A model generated the notes under the pieces. The model was not told the DNA's origin, ran no database searches, and worked only from the letters and a program-made list of their open reading frames with translations. 64,000 bases of DNA from Bigelowiella natans CCMP2755 (lineage: Eukaryota; Protista; Cercozoa). A program made the position numbers and the translations under genes. The first letter of the stretch is position 1. Each line of letters opens with the position of its first letter. Shown here piece after piece: positions 6,266 through 32,300 of this stretch. The stretch lies in the NCBI GenBank assembly GCA_000320545.1, contig ADNK01001913.1:18015-82014 (forward strand), written 5' to 3'.

Positions 6266-6582
6266 TCACCAAAACTTGTGCTTTCCAGCGGGCTTATCGC
6301 CCCTTTTCTTCGGCTTCTTATTATTGCTACCACTATCACTGGATTGGGCTTTAGAGCCTCTCCCGCATCCACGCCCTCTCGCGCCACCCCGCCTTCCTTT
6401 TGGGCGCTGCTTTTCTGAAACCTCAGAGGAATCTTCGCCATCGGTAGAAGATGATGCAACCGATGCAGGGTTGTCATTCGTTTCCACGACTTTTTTAACG
6501 GATCTCCGCCGGCGGGGCGGAGGCTGCAGTAGCATCGATTGTCGTTGTCATTGCACATTGTTTTCAAAGAAACATGGACCAT

Positions 6583-6623
<41 letters not shown>

Positions 6624-6629
6624 GAGAAC

Positions 6630-6679
<50 letters not shown>

Positions 6680-7790
6680 TCTCTCGGTGACACTGATTTC
6701 CATTGTTAATTTTTCTCAGAAAAACTGTGGTGCCGTATCTACCTCTGTCCCTTCTTTCTGCCTTCCGACTATCAAGTCAAAGTTCTTTATCGATCTAGCA
6801 GCAGCAAAGTATCCAAAACGACTTAAATAAGGCACGGGGTCAAAGTGGATTCGCTTGTTGGAAACGGTCAGGTGGAGGGGGACGGGGGGAAAGCTCCTAT
6901 CTAGTACACGTTAGGATGTTTATATGTCTCTAGATTTGGTATATATCACCCAGTAACGCTATCGATTCCTTCGAGATGGGGAGAATGTCCGCTGCCCTGA
7001 GATCAACGAACATTAGCTGCGCCCTCTCTCACTGTGCGCACAACAGCGTGTGCACACGTGCGAGCACACACGTGCACTCACATCTATACGTTTCTAGACA
7101 GGCTCATTCTCTCGTATATCGATTCTAATCTGTGTTGTGTTTGCCCTTCGGCGAGCCCCTTGGCGGGGTGCTGCTTGGTAGCAGCGCACCTGTGCTATCG
7201 AGATTTGAACGAGGCCGTCAACCGCCTCTGAGTTGCCAGCATTTCGGAGCCCCTTGAAGATAAACCAGTCAGCGGAGCAGCCAACCATGCCGAGAGACGC
7301 ACCCACAGCAGTTGGCACACAAAAAAACGAATAATGCGTGCGCGTTAAGAAAGCATTCTTGAAGTTAAAGTCCCCCCCGCACACGTACGTGTTAAAAACT
7401 CGGGCTCGGTTATACATGCGGCCGAGAATGATAACCACTACACGCGACACACACACACACACACAGACAGACACACACCACTATGGGAAGAAAGAAATTT
7501 CACTGACATGCACCATACGCATACGGCAATGCTTGTGCTCCTTCCACAACAGAACTTACACGGAAAGAGAATCATATGGATACACGCACAATGAGCGCCC
7601 TCTCACCGATCTAATTGTCCTCCTCATAGCACGGGCAAGATTCACGAATTTCCTTCGATGAAGGTTTAGGATCAATCACAGATGCACAAACAAACAAGCG
7701 AGCGCGTGCGGGTGGCATGAATGAGCTTCGTCCTCTCCTCTAATCTCTCTTCTCGCTCTCTAAATCCCAACATCTTCTTTCTAAACAGTG

Positions 7791-7832
<42 letters not shown>

Positions 7833-8535
7833 GTACATATATCCGTAGATTTACATATGAATTTTATCTCTTTATGTGTTGTTCTAGCATACTTCCAACA
7901 CACACGCACATACGCGTCACTGCGTGCTCACCGATCTTCCGACCCTACGACAAAAAGCATCTGCTTCTGGGACAGCTTCAAGTCGCTCCAAAGAGAAGGC
8001 ATGCGGCCAACAGTACCATACTCTAACGCCTATTGCGCAAGATGCCGAATTCATCATTTCTTCTACACACCCGTAGTATACAGGCCATAACGAAGAAGTG
8101 GCGCGGTCTTATAACTTGTATAACTACCTGTGCTAGTTGTTCCGCGTCTCCTGTATTCTTTCTCCTTTCAAGAATCTTCCAGAGATAACAAAGGGCAGTG
8201 ATAATTAGCATGAACCCGTGTTCAGCTGCTGGCCTAAAACAGCTTTGCAAAAAGAGAGCTTGCATTCTCGCCAAAAACCAGTAATCGCGCCGCGCACATA
8301 TGCACACATGCACGTGAATGGCATAGAGCCAAGGGAAAGTTATGGTGCGAGAAGCAAAGCGTTTTTGAGCTGTTTCGCACGCGAAGGAAAACATCGGATT
8401 CGAATCTGACCTCTGGAAATGCCTCCTGCTCCTTTAACTTCTCAAACATCGGTTGCGAATACCTACATAATACCGTGCTCAGTGATTCCTCTTTTTAATA
8501 TATCGTAAATAAGACAATAGACACATGTAAATACG

Positions 8536-8582
<47 letters not shown>

Positions 8583-8915
8583 TTTGCAGGTGGAAAAGCA
8601 TTTCACTTATCCCCGCACTCTCCCACACTCCTTCTCATTGAAACGGCTTCTGCAAATGCGTTCGTGCGATGGTGTGATATGTGTGCAGATGTAATTGTGA
8701 TATTGTCTCATATGCTTTGAGCTGTTGTGCGTGTTGATATAACGACATTCGTTACCAGAAATCAAGGAATCGTGAGAGCCCCTTCTCTCTCAAATCACGA
8801 GCGAGTAGCTTTAATCATAAATGTGCACATTAGTCGGGGTAATTTTATCTCAAATTAGCGATTCTAAGACACCTTATTGTTACGTACACGCAAACACAAA
8901 AAACCTCATTCTTCC

Positions 8916-8956
<41 letters not shown>

Positions 8957-9556
8957 CTTTCACACACACAACATAAATACATGTTATGGTCCTTCAAATC
9001 TCACAGAAAAGCAGCCGAACATGACCTCATCCTTCAGTCTTCTCTCGTCTCTTTCTGCTCGATTTTCGATGCCAGCGCTGCCAGAGATTACAACCAACTA
9101 GAGGATACAAAGGAGCGAAATAGAAGCATGTTTACTAAAATTCAATTCATCTTGGGGGGGGGGGAGAGGAATGCAGAACACTTTCCCCTGCGAAATGGTG
9201 CTGCGATACCTGTCCAATAGAGTCAGGAACTCGCAAGGCCATATACATGGCAATACGCCCCCCCATGCTGACGGTCCGAGAAACAGGAAGAGGAAGGAAG
9301 GGGGGGGGGGGGGGAGCGGAAGGACACATATGAGATGAGAATAGATCTTCTTATCCTAACGCTTCGATTTATAAAGCAGTTTAGGATACGAGATGTGTTA
9401 GCTTTTCACTGGGAAGATGGGCAAGATATTGCACCGAAAAGTACCTATATCCGATGAGCGTGTTCTCACTCCATCCCTGTTGCTTCATTAGAGCTGCCAA
9501 AGCCTTTATAACAAACCAAATGTTTTGAGAGAAAAAAAGAATGTATATATGTATCA

Positions 9557-9593
<37 letters not shown>

Positions 9594-9607
9594 ATTATAC
9601 AGAAGTT

Positions 9608-9684
<77 letters not shown>

Positions 9685-9853
9685 TATATTCCATTTATTT
9701 ATGTACTGCGTTTGTCGCACGCGGCCATCATAAGTTCGGCCAAAGGGAAAAGTTTTGATTTTCGATTAGTACCGCAGCCATGTTCCCTATCGTGAGTCCT
9801 CTTGACTCAGACACCCTGGACCTTGGTATTTCAATCAGTTGATATGTATTAAT

Positions 9854-9885
<32 letters not shown>

Positions 9886-10499
9886 ACATATCTCGAACAG
9901 ATATATGAGGGAATACCGTGCTCACAGAATACAATAGAGCGGTGTGAGAGAGAAAATGACATTAAGAGAATAGGAGATATCAGAGAGAATGAAAGCAAGG
10001 GAGGAATACAGAGAGAGAAAAAAGAACGAGAGAGAGAGAGATAGAGAGAGGGGGGGAGAGAGAGGGGGGGAGAGAAAGAGCCACTACTTTCCGTGATTTG
10101 GAAGACTGATAGACACACACTCAAACTGATATAGCCCGCTCTAAGATAACCACCAACATCAAGTATGTTCTTTTGGAACAAAGTAATAAAATAACAACTT
10201 AAAAAAAGAAGCAAATTCTAACATTAAAAGCACACTATGAACCCAGCTTTTTCAGCTTCCCATAGTGTGCACCTGCATTTATCCCCACTACATCGCTCAA
10301 GAAAATAACAGGTCAAAAGGCGAATAAAAGCCTTTACAATCTAGTCGGTAAGAGCGCAAATGCTCCGTAACTTATATCAGAATGTATAAAAGAAGAAGGG
10401 CACGCGTAAAACTACATTTTTTCGTCTTTCGGCCCAATCACGCCATCTGCGAGCTCGCTCTGCTTCCGCCTCCTTCAATGACATAAACAATACATTTGT

Positions 10500-10535
<36 letters not shown>

Positions 10536-10854
10536 GATATTGCATAGCGACACTCATCACTATTCCCTGCACGCGGTACACTACGCTTTGCGCCCCTTGG
10601 ACGATGAGCTCCTCATCAACAAAACTGAGCAATTTCTGGCAGCATTTTGAAATGCGTCCATCTTGTGTGATTTGATCGTACCAGTGTAGTTTCGATGTCG
10701 GACGTGGCCGTCACAGGGGGGGGGTCGGAGTCCCCTGAAGGAGGCACCTAAGAGCATACAAAAGCATACAAAAACCACGCAAATCAACCCATGGAGGAAT
10801 GCAGTCCTTAATTAACAATCAGCACCTATAACTCACGTTTTATGTAAATTACGT

Positions 10855-10916
<62 letters not shown>

Positions 10917-11512
10917 TACCGCTTTAGAGGAAAGTGAGTGCATAACTTGTGCCCAGTCTTCGTTATCTCCGAGGAAGCCATGGAGAAACACCAGCGTCCG
11001 CAGCGTCGAGTTCTTGCAAATCACACGAAAGGGAGGGGGGGGGGGGGAGGAGAAAGAGAAAAAGGAGGCGGAAGAGATGGCAGTTGCGTATTGTAATGTC
11101 GGAAGTGCAAATCCTCCTCATTTTTCAGACAGCCTTTGTTAGCGTTTATGTGAATATGGACTTCGTTCTCTGTATGCGTGCTTACAGTAGGCAGGATAGA
11201 GCTATTGTGTACCTTCACGCGCCGCTCGGGCCTTGTCCTTAACACATGGAAGCTATAGCTGTATCGGTTGTAATTTGGGAATGAGCAGCGTGCAAAGTAG
11301 TTTTTCCATCTATAAGGAGTAAGTATAGCAGAGGAAGGCGTCGCTGGCTAGTCTCCGCCGTGGCCACAGCTGTTGGATGTGTTATGCAGAGGGAAGGGAC
11401 GTGGTGGGTGATACCTGCCCGTTTTTGTGTCCACTTCAAATGTATCCTCGCTCTTAACAACCTGGCCAAGCCAGCGAGAGGATGATTTGCATATATATCA
11501 TAAATACATAAT

Positions 11513-11558
<46 letters not shown>

Positions 11559-11835
11559 TATGAATCATACACATATGTTTATATGTACGTGTAACTTGTT
11601 GTATATGTGCTATTGTGCGAACACGAGTGTTAGTGCTAAAAACGGCTGCTATACAACAAATTTCTGTGATTGTCAAATCCGCACCCCCGTTTGAATGGCC
11701 ACGTCGCCGTCATTGTCTTCTTCCCAGGGCTAGGAATTATTTAAACATATATTTCGCGTGGTGAGGATATCTTGGATGACGATAAAGCTATTTTCTCCGC
11801 CTACACAAGGGCCACGTTACGATAGCATACGACGA

Positions 11836-11876
<41 letters not shown>

Positions 11877-12299
11877 TATTTATATAAATTAATATGTAAA
11901 GACTCACTAATTTAGCTTGCTGCGGCTGTGTCGCATCCTTCTCATCTGGTACATCCGCAGCGCCGTTGGCCTTATGCTCTTCGCTTGCTTGCCAGAGACG
12001 ATAGTAAGCTAGCGGCTGTTGGAAGACCTTTCAAAGCATTTGTGAGTGAGAAGACTTCCAAAAGTGCCTTAGGAAAACATGCACACGCGCATCCGTTTAA
12101 GGGAGGGGGGGATGCTGCTGCTGTAACCTCTTTAATAGCGAATCCAATGCCAGCAGCGGTTTCGTCCTCTGCGCCCTCCGAGGCAAGGGCGTCTTGTGAG
12201 GCGGTGTTCTTTGCGGCCATCATCCAATGGAGCAGGGGACAGCTGGAATCTGCGATTGATGTGATAGAAAGAAGGCGTATTTATGATATCTAAAATATG

Positions 12300-12366
<67 letters not shown>

Positions 12367-13395
12367 TTGTATTTGACTGCACTTCGATCATTTATGCTTT
12401 ACAGCGAAGCAACCAACCTGGATCTATAGCCTTCAAGATCGCATGGGGAGACTGCAGTAAAGCATAGCACAACCAGCACACGATGTTGTGACCTCTATAG
12501 ATTGAAAAATGAGCAAGGGCATGAGTCGAACCTGCACAACTTCATCTGTTCCATTTGGGTGAAGATGATATCTAAGGCGCATTCCCCGTCCTTCTTCCTC
12601 GCCCCCCCCCGTCCCCTCCCCACCCTCTAGCCGAGCATCGTCTCCGTCTCTTGCTTTGAAGATGAGGTCCAAAACCTCGTAGGGTTCCTCCGCCTTTTCC
12701 AATAGATCACAGTTTCAGATACACAACGACAACGCACAAACATCCTTATGGAGTGGAAGGGAGGGAAAGTAAGCGAGAGAGAGAGAGAGAGAGAGGGAGA
12801 AGCATAAATATCCGTCGAGGCGCTGATTAAACCGCGAAGGGGAACTCTCACTCTGACAAGCACACGCGCAAGCGGTCAATGATTCATTCTACGACGAAGT
12901 AGCTGCTTACTGGGGCAGGAGCGACCGCCACTGTGCGTATACTCCGGAGAGCTGCAAGAACGCTTGGATCTCTCTCGCACGATTCCTCTATGGTTGAATG
13001 CGCTTCTAACGCTCGGCTCCTATATAATTCACCAAAAAATCAAAAACATAACTAAAATTAAAGAACCTCCTCTAGCTTGGAATTTAGTTACAATCATGCA
13101 ACTCGACGTAACTACCAGAACCGATCATCAACTTCCTTGATAATGCCCTCTCGTTTATCGTATTCCGTACCAAAACGCGCGTCGAATTCTCTGTTCATTG
13201 ACCAATAGGAAGAAAAGGGGGGGGTGGGGATGGGGGAATGGTAAAAAAAACGTCGTGAAATAACAATCACATCAAGAAACGGTACGATTCTGATAACATC
13301 CAAATATATATATTACATATTTACCAATGACTTTGTATCAAACTTATAAAACCACTGACTTTCCGCTAGTTAATAAGGACGAAAGCGAAGCTATG

Positions 13396-13432
<37 letters not shown>

Positions 13433-13642
13433 TGTGTGTGTGAAAACATGATTGCACCGATTGATCGAGATAATTTGGTTCTCAAAGCCGTCCTGGAGAT
13501 CTGACAGCGCGTCTTGCAAGCCCATGACTTTGTCCATAGCTTCCATTGCTGGATCTTAGTATACCACCGCATTTATTGTCAATGTGTGTGCGTGTAGACG
13601 CCCTCTTACACACGCGCACAGTTGTGTATGCGTCGCATGTAT

Positions 13643-13679
<37 letters not shown>

Positions 13680-14146
13680 CTGTGTGTGTGTGTGTGTGTG
13701 TGTGGTAGAGTCGGCAGTGCTATGCAACTTCTACTTCGTCGCCGCGTGATGGCTTAGAATAATACCTTGCTCCTTGCCATCAACCGCAGAGCTACCCCTT
13801 CGTGCTACATCGTCTGTTTCTATGAAAGGAATGAAGTTCCCTTCTGCGTCTATATACCTGAGGCAGTATTGTATTTAGCCCTTAAACCCTATACGATTGC
13901 CTTGCGTATATTTGATCGGGGGGGTAGGGGGGGGGGAGAAGGAGGGGCTATGCGTAGAACGAAGGGAATAGTGCAAAGGTTGAGTGTTGTGAGAGCAAAG
14001 CGCACCCTCCATCGGCAAAGACAGAGTTCCCATAGGCGTCCACGTAGTTTCCTTCCTCATCCATGTAAACGCCGTCATCTCGATCATCATCTGCAATAAT
14101 GAGGCAGTCTGTTTCAAGGCAAATGCTAGGGAGCAGAGGGAAGGTT

Positions 14147-14196
<50 letters not shown>

Positions 14197-14766
14197 AAGA
14201 TTAAGAAGTCAATGATCCTTCACAGCAGGAGTTGATGAGCTTGTAAGGGTTTTGCTTTGGCCATTCTGACACAGGGGCAATCGGACACGACTAAATGCGC
14301 CAAGAACTCTGTCACAGTGGTTGCTGCAGCATGCAGCATGCAATCATCCATTCATCCGAGGCCATTACCTATCCTTAGCTCCTCTGTCTCGTCGTCAAAT
14401 ATCTCGGCGTCTTCTGAAATCAGCTCTCCTTCTAAGGCAGCCCTCGCAGCATTCTCTCCTTCCCCTGGCTCCCCCTCCCTCACAGAAGATAATTTAGGAG
14501 AGGAGGAGAAGGAGGAGGAGGAGGGGGAGGAGGAGGAGGATGGGGCAGCAGAGGCAACGTTGGCGGCGGAGTGTGTGTTGGCCTCGTCATCATCGTCGAG
14601 TATGCTTTCCACAACTGTTTCGATATTCAATTGGCTCAGCGTAGACGGCGCCTAAAGTTGTAGAGATGTCCACGAGAAAGATGAGAGGCGTGTAGGCCTC
14701 CGACACAAGACACGGCGTTCAAAGCACACACGTACATAGAGAGGGTAGAGAGACAGACAGACACAC

Positions 14767-14809
<43 letters not shown>

Positions 14810-14942
14810 AAGGGAGTCTTTTAGACTCGTTGATATGACCTCTTCCGTGTAAAATGCTAGCGGATCTTCGTACAGCTCTTCCACTAGCACCCCAAGGTGG
14901 TAGGGAAAACGATTCTTTTCGTAGAGAGCAGAAGATATGTTA

Positions 14943-15023
<81 letters not shown>

Positions 15024-17319
15024 GCGTGCGTCAAACGCGACAAACCGCAGCATTGTAAAGATGGTGACAAGACCAAAATAACGACTTGAAAGCGCTATTG
15101 AAACAGCGCTTCTTTCTATATGCATGCGCGCACTCGCAGCTTCATGGCTGAAGGAGCTCTACCCCCCGCGGCTGTTTTGTTTGGTCAAGGATGTGCACTC
15201 CCACCTTATCGCCGAAGTACTGAAAGAAGGACGACGTGTCCTGCAGGAAGAGCTCCTCAGCTCCTGGCGTCCAATGAACCTAGAATCATAGGAAACCAGC
15301 TTGCTCGTAAGATGGGTTGCAAGCACCATCCAAGATGCGACTCTTTGGGATCTTCTAGATTCCAAACTGCTAATGTTAATGAGCATTTGGCCTCGTCCAG
15401 CCACTAGCTGAACCCCAGGGCAATTACTCTGCGCCCTGGACGCAGAGCACGATACCCCTTTGGTTTTATAGGTATTTGCGATTTCGCAGTGATGAGAAGA
15501 CATGTGGAGAGGCGCAACGACGAAGTACAACAATGCACCGCCGCCGACGAATGATGAAGATGAGTGTGTTTGAGAGATATAGACTCACTTCTCATGGCTT
15601 TAAACGCATATGCAGCAGTATTGGCTGGCGACTATCTTACATTTGTGCGGCGGTGGCCTGGAGATAACTCCATGGAATCAGGAAGGATGTGAGCTAGTAG
15701 AACCTTAGATTTACGGTTATGTTATTTTCAGCGTGTAAGGAGGGGGTGTTCTTTCTCTGTGTGGTTTCGTGTGAGGAGTGCTTCGTTGGCTCTCTACCAA
15801 CTAATGTCATTTGTAAAGTTTATAAGAAGTGCGCCCACACTATACAGACCCCTCAGTGTAGAATTTAATATTAGTATTAGTGAGATCTATCTTTCGTCTC
15901 ACTCGATCTTGGAAGTAAGGATTTTCCTCCGCAAAGAAGAAATGCAGCACCAGGCCCAAGTCTCCAGGGGGGTACTCAACGCTTACCAAGCACATCAAAG
16001 CGCATTATATTTGCTATCGACATTAAGTAGTATTCTTCGTTTCAAGGAGAAATCAATAACTACTCGAAGGAAAAGGGAACTGGGGGCAAGGACGAGTAGT
16101 AGGTACCGTATGTCAGTCATGTAGTTCAAAGCGTCTAAGTCCCGAGAGGACAGCACCTCGTAAAGCTGGATAAAACACCAATATATATTTCTGAATAATA
16201 CAGCTTTGGAGAATTCATCTTGGCAAATCTCATATGTAAAAGCAAAACGAGTGTGAAGACAAAGAAACGAGGGAGATTCTCATTAAAAGCAAGCACACAC
16301 ACACACACGCGCGCGCGCGTGCGCCAGAGCAAAAATAGATATATTTGTAGAAATAATTGTGTATTTGTATATCGGGTTGGCAATTATGCTTCCATCCTTG
16401 CAGCTCTCTCACCTCCTTTACGTTCATCATCGCCTGCTGCCAAAAGCCTGGAATTTTGGTGATCTCGTTGGCCCGTTGTGCGAATATGCGTGAGCGCTGG
16501 ATCTCAATGTCCTGCTGCAACTTGAACATCACCTTTGAAGAAATAGCAGTCCGTTTGAGTTAGAACTGCAACAAGAGATTTCCAGCGCGAGCACATCGTC
16601 AATGATTCGTGTCAAGGGATATATATTTTGGGCTGATATATTGAAAAATCCAGATTTTCATATTCCTATGCTGCGAGCTGGATCTTCCTCGCACAGAAGG
16701 AATTATTCTAGGGCAAAGATATATCACATGCTGATTTGGCGTGTTTCTGTCTTGAGCATCACGTCTTACGGTTGGCAAACCTCATCGTATTCCGTTTTCA
16801 AATCCTCGACGCTATGCTGCACGCTTATAAGCGCTGCTTCGCCATCTAGACCAGTGCCTTCTGCAGCAGCGGCCATTTCGGAGCGCTTTGCCTCTTGGGA
16901 AGCAACTTGTGGCGAATGCACTACTGGCAATCTTCCGAAGAAAGTCGAAGGCTGTCTCCTAAATCAATTAATCGTGCGACAATGATTGTGCAGGCGTGTC
17001 AATCCGAATGCCGGTTACAAGTCAATACTGAAATACCTTTGAAGGGGTAACCGACATGGAGTATAAGCCAGCCCGTGCTGATGGCCAAAGAGCATAAGTG
17101 CGTGTGTAAACTACGGCCCGCTGTTGAGGTGACGTCCGTGTTAGTGAGTAGGGTACTTACCAACTGAGAGATAGAGCTTTGTGTCGCGCGCAAACGCCCC
17201 AATGAAACCCTATTCCGTGTAGCTCCACTTGTTGAAAGATATGCTACGGCAGCAAAGAGTAGGCAGATGACAGCTCCATTGAACGATCGTGAGGATGGTT
17301 CCCAAGGGCGGGAGGGCAT
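6266..17319 (-). CDS. Multi-exon fusion: signal/transit-like leader + NAP/SET domain 1 + acidic linker + NAP/SET domain 2 + MenH-like alpha/beta-hydrolase + basic/RGG tail
   Basis: Leader MPSRPWEPSSRSFNGAVICLLFAAVAYLSTSGATRNRVSLGRLR (exon 17161-17319). NAP1: QRANEITKIPGFWQQAMMN, LHFFFAEENPYFQDRVL, VHWTPG..SSFFQYF, LGVLVEELYEDPLAFY. NAP2: LQDALSDLQDGFENQII..EYDKREGIIKEVDDRFWSRALEAH, IGFAIKEVFQQPLAYY. Hydrolase: LVFLHGFLG, SLPNHGKS, IGYSMGGRIA, WYSQPMF, VGRMPSLWSDL, VVGSEDRKF, GSGHSPHLE. A phase-consistent GT-AG path links all parts to the stop at 6266-6268. Confidence 0.8.
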
Positions 17320-23283: not shown

Positions 23284-24294
23284 TTACTCTTCATCACTGA
23301 CGTCCAGGCTTTGCGACGCCTTCAAAATCCTCCTTCGGGCATATTTGACAACTTCATAATCACATTTATTGATTTTCGCGAACTTAATCGCTTGGGACTT
23401 CTGAGGAGCTGGCCATTTTATTTTTGTAATTCGTTCATGAGCTTTCGATGTGTTGTCGCTTCTGATGCCAAACTCCTTCAGAAGGATTGAGCTTGTCTCC
23501 TCGGGATATTCTTTGAAGTCGAGCACGATGTCATATCGATCGACTGAGTTTTTGGCTTTCTCTAAGATCTCGTTGGAGCAATTCAGGGGGTTTCTCCTGA
23601 AATCGGGGACGAGGTGTTGAGTGATGAAGTTTTGACGAAGAATCTTCACTTGGAATGCTCCAAACACCTTATGGCTATCAGACAAGACCGCATCACTAAT
23701 GCTGCCATCAGCAACGTCCTTGCTAGCTATGAAACCCCACTGATTAAGGTGTGACAGGTATCGTTCCCACGGGTCGCGAACCAGAAGAACTGTGGTGTAT
23801 GCATCCCAGAATGAAGAAGACAAATCACGATAGCGATCCATGGAAGGGCCGAAGTTATTCGTCTCCCGCCTCAGGCCCATCTCACTAAAAACAAAGTTAC
23901 ACGCTTCTTCATCAAAGGCCTCGAGCCCCATCTTCGCTTCCTCCGGGGTAATGTCTGCTGCCCGCCACTTCTTCCCGATTAGCTTCTCAAACCTCACCTG
24001 CACCCTGTCGGGACGGCAGTTCGCTCCGAGGGTCGCACGGCAGTCACGTTGAAGGGAGAAATCGACGCAGAGAGAGGAGCCGCCACACTTCATAACGTGC
24101 TCTACGAACACTGGCTTGTCAGACCTGACCTTTGGAAGGCCCGTGGTCGTCTGCAGCTCCAGCGGTTGGGCCTCTTTGGACCCATTGTTCGATGTAAGTG
24201 TAGACAGTAAAGCAACACTGGGGCCCTGCGAAGGAAATGCCCACTCAGCCCCGGCAGCTAGAAAGTGAATTCCGAGGTAGAATCGGAAGAACAT
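23284..24294 (-). CDS. Intronless secretory-pathway PAPS-dependent sulfotransferase (Sulfotransfer_2-like)
   Basis: 336-aa ORF with hydrophobic N-terminus, 5'-PSB motif FVEHVMKCGGSSL, 3'-PB motif LLVRDPWERYLSH, and C-terminal INKCDYEVVKYA. Confidence 0.85.
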   Translation of the reverse strand: MFFRFYLGIHFLAAGAEWAFPSQGPSVALLSTLTSNNGSKEAQPLELQTTTGLPKVRSDKPVFVEHVMKCGGSSLCVDFSLQRDCRATLGANCRPDRVQVRFEKLIGKKWRAADITPEEAKMGLEAFDEEACNFVFSEMGLRRETNNFGPSMDRYRDLSSSFWDAYTTVLLVRDPWERYLSHLNQWGFIASKDVADGSISDAVLSDSHKVFGAFQVKILRQNFITQHLVPDFRRNPLNCSNEILEKAKNSVDRYDIVLDFKEYPEETSSILLKEFGIRSDNTSKAHERITKIKWPAPQKSQAIKFAKINKCDYEVVKYARRRILKASQSLDVSDEE

Positions 24295-29514: not shown

Positions 29515-32300
29515 TTATGTACTGCTACTTCTCGCGCCTTCATTACTACTACTTCCTCCGCCATCTGCAGCATTGCCGCTACTACTCGTTTGAGAGGGCT
29601 GCTCCTGCCCGCTTCCCCCACCCCCCTCTTCTTGCTGCTGCTGCTGCGAGTTGGTGAAGCTCCTTGCCACAATCGACGTGAATATCTTCTTCGCCATCTT
29701 GAGGCGCTCGCATGTCTTCGTCTCCTGCAGCAGCACAACAGCGCGGTGCCCCATGCGGGAGAAGGTCGTCACGAGCGCGGCGAACCAGAATGACCACCGC
29801 ATGGGCTCGGAGGACGGGTCGGGCTGCTCTCCGATGTGGTGTGCGATTTGCTGGCAAAGGCCGGGAACCTTCTCCAGGAATGCGTTGGAGAGCTGCACCG
29901 TGGCTTTGAGTTCCTGCTCGTCCACGGCCTTGTTCTCCTCCTCGTAAGGCGTGAAGGTGCAATACGCGAGTCCCTGGGTGCCCTCTTCCACCCACGATTT
30001 CGTGACCTTGTTTTTGTGTCGAGAAAGACGAGGCATAACGGAGGGAGGGAGGGGGGGGGGGGGGTCCGTCATTACACGTGGGGAGGAGGAGGGGAAGGAG
30101 GAGGAATAGCAGCGTATAACAGGCCTCGACGGCGGCATGTAGCTGAATAAAGCCAGAAGTAACAGTAACATGTGCAGCAGCATATTCAGTGTATAGCTCT
30201 CTGTGAGTACCTTGACTCTGTCCTGGAGAGTAGCTTTGAGCAGGGCACGGCCATCGGGGAGGAACTCGCATTCGTCCACATGAGCCATGAGCCCCAGGTC
30301 TCCTTCAGACGCCTGGAAATGGAGGTTATTGCGGTGGTGCTGGTGGTGAGGATGATGATGATGATGACGATGATGATGATGATGACAGTGGTGAACGAGA
30401 ATGAAGCGGCGTATAAGCAGCCCTAGTCGTCAGTGGCAACTCGTCTCGCTGCTATTGTACACGCCTCTGCACATCTGATCTGGAAATATTCGCGAAACCC
30501 CTTTTGGCACTGCCACCACCACTGAAACTTTGTTACGTCGTACGCGCGCGCGCACACGAACACGTGCATGAAAGAATATGTGCACGGCTATGGACGCACG
30601 CATAAACGCACGCGTAAACAGTTTGTGACCTTGTAGTCCGAGAAGTTCGGTAGGTATATGAACTTGCGATTGGATGAGATACATCGGTTTATCATGTGCC
30701 GGTATCTTTGCTCAAACAGGTGAAGGTGCAGTAAGGAGCCTGACCGGGTTTGTGAGGAGGGCGGAGGATGGGTGAGAAGAAAGAGGTGTTAGGGAGGTGT
30801 AGCAGCGAAGCTATAGCAGCAGCAGCAGCAGCAGCAATAGCACCTGGGAAAAGAACATTGTTGTAGAAGAATATTGGAAGTGTGCTCTCAAACGTGCTCA
30901 TGTCCTTTTTGGCCTCGTTTTGTCGCTGTTTTGCACATGTGTTGCCATTTAGCTCGATGAAACACGCATTCAAGAGATTCGGATGGGGACTGAAATCATC
31001 GGTAATTTATGCGGAGCGGAATGGCAATCCCGTCTGCGCACTACCGACGGGTGTTGGGGTTTAGGTGAGATTCGGCGTGGGTCAGTGGCCCTTTGTTATG
31101 GAAGTGTTCTCTTCTAGGTTTAGCCATGCCCCAAACAAGGAATACACCACTGTTAGAAACCCCTTTCGATAGACGCAACATGCCCTCTGTGATTCATCAG
31201 CAACGACGTTGTTACTCGAATAAAATTCGCTTTGCCGTCTCCCCACCCACCCCAAATCTTCCTCTTTTTCATCATCAAGGGAAGAAAACTGACCTCCTTG
31301 TATAGCTCTGGAAATGTCCTCCGAGCAACGTTCGCAAGCATGATGTTGGCAGCATGCTGGAAAAAGGATGAATACCAGATTAACGCTCAAGATCAAAAAT
31401 CCAACACGGACAACACGTACAAATACACGTACACGAGCGTACATCTATACACGCAAATTCATTCGCATAAGCACAAGTTTATTTGGTGTAAACGAATGCG
31501 CTTCAGTAAAAGAGAGAAAGAGAGAAAAAAAAAGTTTACAAAAAATGTGGTAATCCAATCCCCTTCGCCTCTCCTTCTAATCCTCCGTCCTCTTCCTACC
31601 GTGGAGGGGTCGATGTGACATACCGCCCTGCAGTTAGGGCACTTCTTCTTAGATCGTTGCAAAGCATGACACAAGCACACCTGAAAAAACAACAAAGGAA
31701 GGAATGGAGACAAAGCCAGACATCGACGCCACTTAGACTGCGACTATCCCTAACTACTACTACTGTTCTACTTTACCCCCCCCACACCCCTCTACTCTAT
31801 GAACAATGTGTCAAAGACTAACCCGGCAGAACGAATGGCCGCACGCGAGGGAGATAGGCTCGGATATTAAGTTCAGGCACAGAGGGCATGTGAGCATCTC
31901 CATCAGCTAAGAGGAAGGGGGGCAAAAGAAGCCAACACGCACAACGGGTGGGAGCACACGATATCAATAAATGAGTATCAAACTACACTCGAAGGTATTA
32001 GTCGGAAAATGCTGCATCCGCTAGCCCCCCGCTTACTCCTACCTCTTTGTTTTACGTGTTTAGAAGCAGCGACACAAATAATACTTGGAGGGGGGGGGAT
32101 ACGAAGGTTACACCGTATCCAATACCTCCTTTTTCGAAGAGTCCTGAGAATTGCACGAGGATCCCGTTGACGAGGAAGTCCTTATTGAAGAAGATTTTCT
32201 ATCTCCAGAGAGCTGGGAAGAGGGCCGCGAAACATTTGGAGGGGCTGCTTCTTCAACCTCTGGAGAATTACGTCATGGTAACACCAGAGGTAATAATAGC
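29515..32300 (-). CDS. LON peptidase N-terminal domain and RING finger protein (LONRF-like E3 ligase)
   Basis: [28 protein letters not shown]|[18 protein letters not shown]; [46 protein letters not shown]. The 5' end is unresolved (may extend to ~32.7 kb). Confidence 0.85.

What the first reader, a model, noticed from the sequence alone, without database searches (positions are those of the whole stretch)
6266..17319. Organelle-targeted tandem NAP/SET histone chaperone fused to an intact MenH-like alpha/beta-hydrolase
Seen: a phase-consistent GT-AG path runs from a hydrophobic + Arg/Ser-rich leader through two NAP domains. It continues via QQAKL|PWEEDNDGDVAIQTG|VVKSEDTFEVDTKTG|SYSFHVLRTRPERRVK|NSTLRTLVFLHGFLG into a hydrolase with a full triad (GYSMGG, GSED, GHSPHLE) and ends in a Lys/Arg/RGG tail. 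Known: NAP/SET proteins are obligate dimers; MenH (SHCHC synthase) makes phylloquinone and in plants is part of the PHYLLO fusion; chlorarachniophytes import nucleus-encoded proteins, including histones, into the periplastid/nucleomorph compartment using bipartite leaders. Inference: this is either a single-chain NAP pseudo-dimer serving nucleomorph chromatin with an attached enzyme, or a plastid polyprotein carrying MenH. I know of no described NAP-NAP-MenH architecture.
Basis: partly seen in the sequence, partly recalled or inferred. Interest (0 to 1): 0.88.

Follow-up and report, generated by a model that had tools for sequence, protein, structure and literature searches.

The report
Leader-bearing tandem NAP–MenH fusion gene
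This is one real, spliced nuclear gene of the alga Bigelowiella natans that joins an organelle-import leader, two histone-chaperone-type (NAP) domains and a vitamin-K1 pathway enzyme (MenH) in a single protein. I found this combination nowhere else, and its purpose is still open.

Summary
On the minus strand, ATG 17319 to stop 6266, there is one intron-rich gene. Spliced RNA contigs from three public runs (two studies) show 15 GT..AG introns.

The gene is already a public ab initio model, JGI Bigna1 77328 (P0001, 1089 aa). I found no paper that describes it.

On P0001:
- NAP1 is a clear SET/NRP-type NAP domain (Pfam 60.9 bits; human SET E 2e-13).
- NAP2 is a divergent NAP domain (25-30 bits).
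- The hydrolase is specifically MenH (TIGR03695 163-170 bits, next family 45; best solved relatives are S. aureus and E. coli MenH).

The public model omits two short exons that MenH homology calls for: the beta-4 strand (10125-10088) and the catalytic His (6996-6958). A phase-consistent GT-AG chain that includes both exists. I had no RNA laid on that half of the gene.

The leader has a hydrophobic core followed by an acid-poor, Arg/Ser-rich stretch, as in chlorarachniophyte bipartite signals. A complex prediction supports antiparallel NAP1-NAP2 helix pairing (0.72 against a best control of 0.36). The sub-compartment, histone binding and enzyme activity are untested.

It is a new domain architecture built from known parts.

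The parts
17165..17319 (-). Exon 1: start codon, signal-peptide-like hydrophobic core and the start of an Arg/Ser-rich transit-peptide-like stretch
   Evidence: First ATG of the open frame. Kyte-Doolittle windows reach 3.0 at residues 12-30. Residues 33-95 have 10 Lys/Arg against 2 Asp/Glu. Donor 17165 keeps the frame when spliced straight to 16958. The public model uses donor 17161 plus a mini-exon at about 17077-17036.
16781..16958 (-). Exon 2: rest of the leader and start of the long NAP1 helix
   Evidence: The loose end of the contigs at 16534 matches 16783-16812. AG and GT flank the exon.
14840..16532 (-). NAP1, a SET/NRP-type NAP domain, in six exons: 16532-16413, 16165-16107, 15981-15903, 15703-15641, 15279-15205, 14914-14840
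   Evidence: Four joints were seen in RNA contigs. Pfam NAP 60.9 bits, E 1.5e-16. Human SET E 1.9e-13; also NRP1, NAP1 and Vps75. Depth arithmetic favours donor 15205 over the public model's 15163.
13766..14651 (-). Acidic, Ser-rich linker of about 150 residues in three exons: 14651-14369, 14090-14006, 13857-13766
   Evidence: Joints 14090>14369 and 13855>14004. Both halves of exon 14651-14369 are covered by contigs that break in a Ser-codon low-complexity tract and overlap by about k-1 bases. Net charge is -24 over the 94 linker residues present in P0001.
11908..13554 (-). NAP2, a divergent NAP domain, in seven exons: 13554-13458, 13190-13116, 13019-12911, 12693-12532, 12451-12418, 12249-12128, 12027-11908
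   Evidence: Five joints are listed and one more follows from depth arithmetic. Pfam NAP 25.2 bits for the whole domain and 29.8 bits (E 4.7e-7) for its first half. The C-terminal motif matches NAP1 (BLASTP E 0.007). Language-model neighbours are all NAP clusters at a score of 0.82, which counts as a lead only. No PDB hit by sequence.
11415..11729 (-). Two 45-47-nt mini-exons (11729-11685, 11461-11415) that encode an acidic linker between NAP2 and MenH
   Evidence: Both flanking joints of each were seen in three runs within single contigs. Linker net charge is -10, with no basic or hydroxylated internal transit peptide.
6958..11258 (-). MenH (SHCHC synthase) domain in about 14 small exons: 11258-11213, 11012-10920, 10125-10088, 9821-9773, 9503-9445, 9267-9210, 9097-9026, 8808-8756, 8462-8411, 8175-8128, 8029-7932, 7652-7607, 7252-7190, 6996-6958
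   Evidence: The first two exons are confirmed by RNA. TIGR03695 163-170 bits against 45 for the next family. S. aureus MenH E 5e-23 and E. coli MenH E 1.7e-16. MenH homologues hit the exons in collinear order, including 10125-10088 and 6996-6958, which the public model lacks. The chain is phase-consistent.
6266..6853 (-). C-terminal extension and Lys/Arg/Gly-rich tail with the stop codon (exons 6853-6743 and 6523-6266)
   Evidence: Mapped from P0001 and open to the TGA at 6268-6266. Tail net charge is +14. No Pfam family. No RNA was laid here.

Best explanation
This is a single nuclear gene of Bigelowiella natans (public model Bigna1 77328). Its mRNA is spliced from about 36 small exons and encodes one preprotein of roughly 1,100-1,150 residues.

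Domain order: an ER signal peptide plus a transit-peptide-like stretch; a SET-type NAP domain; an acidic linker of about 150 residues; a second, divergent NAP domain; an acidic linker of about 55 residues; a complete MenH (SHCHC synthase) domain; and a basic Lys/Arg/Gly-rich tail.

Most likely working:
1. The bipartite leader takes the whole chain into the four-membrane plastid complex.
2. The two NAP domains pair through their long N-terminal helices, antiparallel as in every solved NAP dimer. This gives a single-chain NAP dimer.
3. The MenH domain carries out the pyruvate-elimination step of phylloquinone synthesis.

Shown: the spliced fusion transcript, the open frame, and the domain identities.
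Inferred: import, helix pairing, enzyme activity.
Open: whether the destination is the stroma (my slight preference, because of MenH and the acid-free, positively charged leader) or the periplastid space/nucleomorph.
For: - Fifteen GT..AG joints appear in RNA contigs of three runs. Single contigs span NAP2, four junctions and the hydrolase.
- The frame is open from ATG to stop.
- The exon 11908-12027 retrieves only P0001, a 1089-aa model with the same start and stop, out of 1.84 billion proteins.
- NAP: 78.3 bits overall, NAP1 60.9 bits, first half of NAP2 29.8 bits. SET, NRP1, NAP1 and Vps75 in the PDB.
- MenH: TIGR03695 163-170 bits against 45 for the next family. The best solved relatives are all MenH.
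- In the alignment to E. coli MenH, the residues at E. coli positions Tyr85, Ser86, Arg90, Arg124, Trp147 and Arg168 are identical. That these residues matter is my recollection of Jiang et al. 2009. PMC3097144 confirms the triad, and the Tyr and Trp roles.
- The four other best MenH-model loci in the genome are generic hydrolases (42-58 bits, no MenH preference).
- Leader composition.
- Complex prediction for NAP1 + NAP2: score 0.72, best of 3 controls 0.36. The runs agree in at least 98% of contacts, and partner pLDDT is at least 64. The mark was reached by 51 of 78 solved complexes and 2 of 108 mismatched pairs. The interface is helix 106-154 against helix 393-444, antiparallel.
Against: - No localisation or signal-peptide predictor was available, so the leader is judged on composition only.
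- NAP2 gets no PDB hit by sequence. AlphaFold2 without an alignment failed on it (pLDDT 37-39).
- NAP dimers are solved structures, so the complex pass may only reflect family likeness. It cannot tell an intramolecular pair from ordinary NAP1-NAP1 or NAP2-NAP2 dimers.
- P0001 stays under the MenH equivalog cut-off of 208.55 bits.
- The beta-4 and His exons rest on homology and splice-site phase, not on RNA.
- A histone chaperone has no known client in the stroma, and MenH has no known role beside the nucleomorph. Either destination leaves one half of the protein unexplained.
- No orthologue with this architecture was found. Conservation therefore cannot be used as support.
Confidence: 0.6

Rival explanations
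1. Periplastid/nucleomorph histone chaperone. The leader stops the protein in the periplastid compartment. The basic C-terminal tail then acts as a nuclear-import signal for the nucleomorph. The tandem NAP unit handles the H2A and H2B that the host nucleus encodes and sends to the nucleomorph. MenH is a passenger or has a second role.
For: - NAP1 is a typical SET/NRP histone-chaperone domain.
- The chain after the leader is strongly acidic: net -7, -11, -24, -21 and -10 in successive segments.
- The tail is Lys/Arg-rich and resembles a nuclear-import signal.
- PMC5635652 cites Hirakawa et al. [quoted passage not shown]
- Nucleomorph genomes keep only a few chaperones, with Hira the only one reported for Bigelowiella (PMC4822330).
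- From memory: Hirakawa et al. 2010 linked acidic residues late in the leader to periplastid retention.
Against: - The MenH domain keeps its triad and substrate-binding residues. Its pathway partners are stromal in plants (PMC6189191).
- The first 60 or so residues after the signal peptide are acid-poor and net +8, as in stroma-targeted leaders.
- No localisation data exist. The protein is not mentioned in the plastid/periplastid proteome paper.
Confidence: 0.28
2. Imported polyprotein. The fusion is translated as one chain and is cut in the acidic linker after import. This releases a free MenH and a free tandem-NAP protein.
For: - The 55-residue linker between NAP2 and MenH is encoded by separate mini-exons and looks unstructured.
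- From memory: polyprotein precursors are known for plastid proteins of euglenids and dinoflagellates.
Against: - The linker shows no repeated cleavage motif and no internal transit peptide.
- The two products would share one compartment anyway.
- As far as I know, polyproteins have not been reported in chlorarachniophytes.
Confidence: 0.1
3. Conjoined transcript of two neighbouring genes. The functional products come from separate NAP-NAP and MenH mRNAs, and the fusion is a read-through by-product.
For: - In run X5 contig depth rises toward the 3' end (8.9, 15.7, 42.3).
- From memory: Curtis et al. 2012 reported very frequent alternative splicing in B. natans.
- An intron-retaining or alternative form is visible at 15471-15668 in X2.
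Against: - The depth step in X5 lies inside NAP2, at a G-rich contig break. It is not at the NAP2/MenH border.
- In X1 and X2 the three contigs have similar depth (60/68/60 and 34/30/26).
- The contigs cross all four junctions without branching in three runs.
- MenH would have no leader of its own, because the sequence upstream of 11258 is acidic.
Confidence: 0.05

Closest known systems
SET/TAF-I beta and plant NRP1/NRP2 (short NAP-family histone chaperones)
   Same: NAP1 aligns to human SET over about 130 residues (E 1.9e-13) and to Arabidopsis NRP1 (E 2e-7). It has the long dimerisation helix, the earmuff core and the C-terminal motif. An acidic stretch follows the domain, as in SET.
   Different: Here two NAP domains sit in one chain, and the second is highly divergent. 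They are preceded by an organelle-import leader and followed by an enzyme. Known NAP proteins have one domain and form homodimers.
MenH, SHCHC synthase (E. coli 4MYD/4GDM, S. aureus 2XMZ) and the MenH module of plant/algal PHYLLO
   Same: It is the best family hit by a wide margin and the best solved relative. A plant PHYLLO and bacterial MenD-MenH and MenH-MenB fusions are the only database relatives of the enzyme part. The nucleophile elbow, the Asp and His motifs and the Arg/Tyr/Trp substrate contacts are conserved.
   Different: MenH is not fused to MenF, MenD or MenC. The MenD gene lies on another contig (C1589). The fusion partner is a chromatin-type chaperone. The domain is split into about 14 exons of 38-98 nt.
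[quoted passage not shown]
   Same: The N-terminus has a hydrophobic signal-peptide-like core followed by an Arg/Ser/Thr-rich, acid-poor stretch. This is the pattern described for B. natans and Amorphochlora leaders (PMC4641359, PMC3542566).
   Different: No member of that set is reported to carry NAP domains or to combine a chromatin-type module with a metabolic enzyme. Targeting of this protein is untested.

Membership tests
NAP family (Pfam PF00956) | Profile match above the curated gathering score (28.6 bits) | tested here: met
   NAP1 (P0001:100-330) scores 60.9 bits. The first half of NAP2 (P0001:392-500) scores 29.8 bits, and the whole NAP2 segment 25.2 bits, just under the cut-off. Exon by exon from the window, only 11.7 and 13.7 bits were reached.
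NAP family (Pfam PF00956) | Long N-terminal helix that pairs antiparallel with a second NAP helix, followed by an alpha/beta earmuff domain | tested here: inconclusive
   Complex prediction scores 0.72 against a best control of 0.36. The interface is 106-154 with 393-444, antiparallel. The pass may reflect memory of solved NAP dimers. AlphaFold2 single-sequence models were too poor to compare folds.
NAP family (Pfam PF00956) | Binds histones (H2A-H2B or H3-H4) | not testable with these tools
   Needs pull-down or ITC with B. natans nuclear and nucleomorph-type histones.
MenH / SHCHC synthase (NCBIfam TIGR03695) | Equivalog score of at least 208.55 bits | tested here: not met
   P0001 scores 162.9 bits, and its hydrolase part 169.5 bits. 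The model tested lacks the beta-4 and His exons and carries about 59 probably spurious residues. The RNA- and homology-corrected joined model has no reference and was not searched, so the shortfall may be an annotation artefact.
MenH / SHCHC synthase (NCBIfam TIGR03695) | Ser-Asp-His triad in alpha/beta-hydrolase order | tested here: met
   Ser is in the exon pair 9503-9445/9267-9210 and Asp in 8029-7932; both align to MenH. His is in exon 6996-6958, which matches the MenH C-terminal motif of three homologues and fits the reading phase. Inclusion of the His exon in mRNA was not verified.
MenH / SHCHC synthase (NCBIfam TIGR03695) | Substrate-binding residues (E. coli Tyr85, Arg90, Arg124, Trp147, Arg168) | tested here: met
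   All five are identical in the HMMER alignment to 4MYD. Their role is taken from PMC3097144 (Tyr, Trp, triad) and from my memory of Jiang et al. 2009 (the Arg residues).
MenH / SHCHC synthase (NCBIfam TIGR03695) | Converts SEPHCHC to SHCHC | not testable with these tools
   Needs an enzyme assay or complementation of an E. coli menH mutant.
Chlorarachniophyte bipartite-leader preproteins | N-terminal signal peptide followed by a positively charged transit-peptide-like sequence | tested here: inconclusive
   Composition fits: a hydrophobic core at residues 12-30, and residues 33-95 net +8 with 12 Ser/Thr. No SignalP/ChloroP-type predictor and no import assay was available.
PHYLLO (MenF/MenD/MenC/MenH fusion) | MenH fused to the MenD and MenC modules | tested here: not met
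   No MenD or MenC similarity in P0001. MenD exons are on contig C1589.

The most novel reading that the evidence does not exclude
The protein is a single-chain NAP heterodimer that works inside the complex plastid. There it receives the host-encoded H2A-H2B as they arrive in the periplastid space and hands them to the nucleomorph. It would be a dedicated histone chaperone for a relict nucleus, tied to a photosystem-I cofactor enzyme so that the two supplies are made together. Alternatively, a NAP fold has been recruited to a histone-free compartment for a new client.
Probability: 0.25. Interest if true: 0.8.

Novelty: new variant of a known kind. Interest (0 to 1): 0.6.

Why it matters
- NAP chaperones are known as one-domain homodimers. 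A natural tandem version would be a ready-made test of whether the two halves of a NAP dimer can specialise.
- Chlorarachniophytes must supply their nucleomorph with host-encoded histones, yet no imported histone chaperone has been described. This gene is a concrete, testable candidate.
- It also appears to be the alga's only clear MenH, separated from the rest of the phylloquinone fusion enzyme. It therefore bears on how that pathway was rebuilt after secondary endosymbiosis.
- The public gene model is wrong in at least four places, including the catalytic His. Anyone using it would wrongly conclude that the enzyme is dead.

Tried and rejected
- Exon-by-exon Pfam and NCBIfam from the window were too weak to decide.
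- AlphaFold2 without an alignment gave unusable models, so no fold search was run: NAP1-linker-NAP2 had pLDDT 37 and NAP2 alone pLDDT 39.
- Searches for orthologues or other tandem-NAP or NAP-MenH proteins found none (metagenome scan). These searches are limited by length windows and word indexing, so the blank is weak.
- The look-up of encoding contigs had no record for P0001.
- A plant MenC query found nothing in the genome, which is uninformative.
- A candidate beta-4 exon near 10806-10775 looked right by eye. I rejected it because contig depth in 10750-10948 is fully explained by 26 exon bases, and it would need a 28-41-nt intron.
- The 3' end predicted from contig length (about 5913 or about 6014) did not discriminate between gene models.
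- Earlier scan findings: nothing on this place or topic.
I repeated the mapping with references only.
- The RNA- and homology-corrected joined protein has no reference, so it was not sent to any search, fold or complex tool.

Full report
**What is there.** The window belongs to a 91.4-Mb assembly. The only database protein that contains the exon 11908-12027 is jgi/Bigna1/77328 of Bigelowiella natans (P0001, 1089 aa). On the minus strand the frame opens with the first ATG at 17319 and closes with a TGA at 6268-6266. The region is full of short exons. They are separated by introns that nearly all carry compound CA/TA or GA microsatellites.

**Transcript evidence.** I used the single read-laying run on 10750-16700. 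This stretch holds both junctions in doubt.
- Contigs of three runs from two studies are spliced. Fifteen joints are listed, and after the stated cut shifts every skipped piece begins GT and ends AG on the minus strand.
- They lie inside single contigs of 1973-1977 nt. These contigs start in NAP2 (about 12604) and run about 1400 nt past 10920.
- The contigs break at two places only. One is a Ser-codon tract inside exon 14651-14369, where neighbouring contigs overlap by about k-1 bases. The other is a G-rich tract inside exon 12693-12532.
- Bin depths equal contig depth times exon bases almost exactly. This also supports the splice 12911>12693 and the donor 15205, and it rules out any exon in 10750-10919.
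- The contig that holds NAP1 extends about 420 nt upstream of 16532. Its loose end matches 16783-16812, so it includes exon 2 and the ATG region.
- Runs X1, X2 and X5 are labelled RNA only as a guess. The splicing itself shows that they are cDNA. The one true raw-read RNA run (X15) gave only two reads.

**Reading frame.** With the observed joints and the best-fitting splice sites for the few unlisted ones, the frame is open from 17319 to 10920. For 10920-6266 I had no RNA. I mapped P0001 back to the genome and compared four MenH relatives with the DNA by tblastn.
- The relatives hit the exons in collinear order.
- They also hit two short exons that P0001 lacks. One is 10125-10088, the beta-4 strand with the motif that follows it. 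The other is 6996-6958, the catalytic His motif.
- P0001 instead carries three exons (10744-10415) that match nothing in MenH. It also splices 7190 directly to 6853.
- A GT-AG chain with both homology-supported exons is phase-consistent and ends at the same stop.
- P0001 also differs from the RNA in NAP1 (14 extra residues from donor 15163) and in the first linker (59 residues missing).
- The corrected joined protein has no reference. I therefore did not search or fold it. All family tests below use P0001 or single exons.

**Domain identities.**
- *NAP1* (P0001 about 108-297) scores 60.9 bits on Pfam NAP. It aligns to human SET at E 1.9e-13, and then to NRP1/2, NAP1 and Vps75.
- *NAP2* (about 392-606) scores 25.2 bits as a whole and 29.8 bits for its first half. 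It shares the C-terminal motif with NAP1 (E 0.007). Its language-model neighbours are only NAP clusters, at a score that counts as a lead only. It has no sequence hit in the PDB. It is a NAP domain that is far diverged, not a recent duplicate of NAP1.
- *The hydrolase* scores 163-170 bits on the MenH equivalog model against 45 for the next family. Its best solved relatives are S. aureus, E. coli and V. cholerae MenH. In that alignment the nucleophile Ser, the preceding Tyr, three Arg and the Trp of E. coli MenH are identical. The score is below the equivalog cut-off (208.55 bits), as expected for a model missing about 30 profile positions at each of two sites.
- The other four best MenH-model loci of the genome are generic hydrolases. 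MenD lies on another contig. This gene is therefore the only clear MenH I could find, and it is not part of a PHYLLO-type fusion.

**Leader, linkers and tail.**
- Residues 12-30 form a strong hydrophobic core.
- Residues 33-95 hold 10 Lys/Arg, 2 Asp/Glu and 12 Ser/Thr. This is the pattern of chlorarachniophyte signal peptide plus transit-peptide-like leaders (PMC4641359, PMC3542566).
- Everything from there to the start of MenH is acidic.
- The NAP2-MenH linker has no basic, hydroxylated stretch that could act as a second transit peptide.
- The last 85 residues are Lys/Arg/Gly-rich (net +14) and match no family.

**Do the two NAP domains pair?** I asked the complex predictor for NAP1 (105-300) against NAP2 (392-606).
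- The score was 0.72, and the best of 3 controls was 0.36.
- The runs agree in at least 98% of contacts, and partner pLDDT is at least 64.
- The mark was reached by 51 of 78 solved complexes and 2 of 108 mismatched pairs.
- The contacts run 146 with 404, 124 with 426 and 117 with 433. This is two long helices lying antiparallel, the dimer mode of the family.
- Because NAP dimers are solved, this shows likeness and compatibility. It does not prove that this pair forms, or that it forms within one chain.
- The 95-150-residue linker is long enough for an intramolecular pair.

**Interpretation.** The anatomy is secure: my odds are about 0.9 that this is one gene giving one fusion mRNA. The mechanism is inferred.
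- I favour import by the bipartite leader, a single-chain NAP dimer and an active MenH.
- The compartment is the crux. MenH and the acid-free leader point to the stroma. The NAP chemistry, the acidic body and the basic tail point to the periplastid space and nucleomorph, where host-encoded histones arrive (Hirakawa et al. 2011, as cited in PMC5635652).
- My odds are about 0.45 stroma, 0.3 periplastid/nucleomorph, 0.1 cleavage into two products, and the rest other.
- Separate genes are essentially excluded by the contigs.

**Novelty.**
- No paper in the library mentions this model, a NAP protein of the plastid complex, or a NAP-MenH fusion.
- No other protein with this architecture turned up, within the limits of those searches.
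- The sequence itself is public and carries automatic Pfam labels.
- I rate it a new variant of known kinds, of real interest to people working on nucleomorphs and on NAP chaperones. Its function is not yet shown.

Noticed in passing
window 6550-15060 (for example 6600-6680, 9560-9690, 10845-10922, 12300-12390, 14940-15030): Almost every intron of this gene carries a compound microsatellite: CA/TG runs abutting TA runs, or GA/CT runs. The read tool masked twelve such places.
   Followed up: no
window 15471-15668: In run X2 a contig of depth 15.4 covers intron sequence next to exon 15703-15641. The spliced joint there has depth 13.7, against 26 for neighbouring joints. This suggests a frequent intron-retaining or alternative form. 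Read-through meets a stop at 15634-15632, inside NAP1.
   Followed up: partly
window 13766-14090: The acidic linker between the NAP domains holds three loosely repeated short motifs (an aromatic residue, Asp and Gly-Asn spaced alike) across exons 14090-14006 and 13857-13766.
   Followed up: no
P0001 against the window: 15204-15163, 14651-14475, 10744-10415, 10125-10088, 6996-6958, 17077-17036: The public JGI model Bigna1 77328 disagrees with RNA contigs or with MenH homology at up to six places. It lacks the catalytic His exon.
   Followed up: yes
G000:C1589:29447-33400 (L005, L006, L008): MenD exons (75 bits on TIGR00173, and hits to a plant PHYLLO) lie on a different contig. I did not determine whether that gene also carries MenF or MenC modules.
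   Followed up: partly
G000:C3539:12410-12703 and C3588:64688-64996 (L001, L002): These are other NAP-family exons in the genome (27 and 26 bits). They are presumably the ordinary nuclear NAP1/SET genes.
   Followed up: no
window 23284-24294 and 29515-30288, minus strand: These are the longest uninterrupted ATG ORFs of the window (336 and 257 aa). I did not examine them.
   Followed up: no
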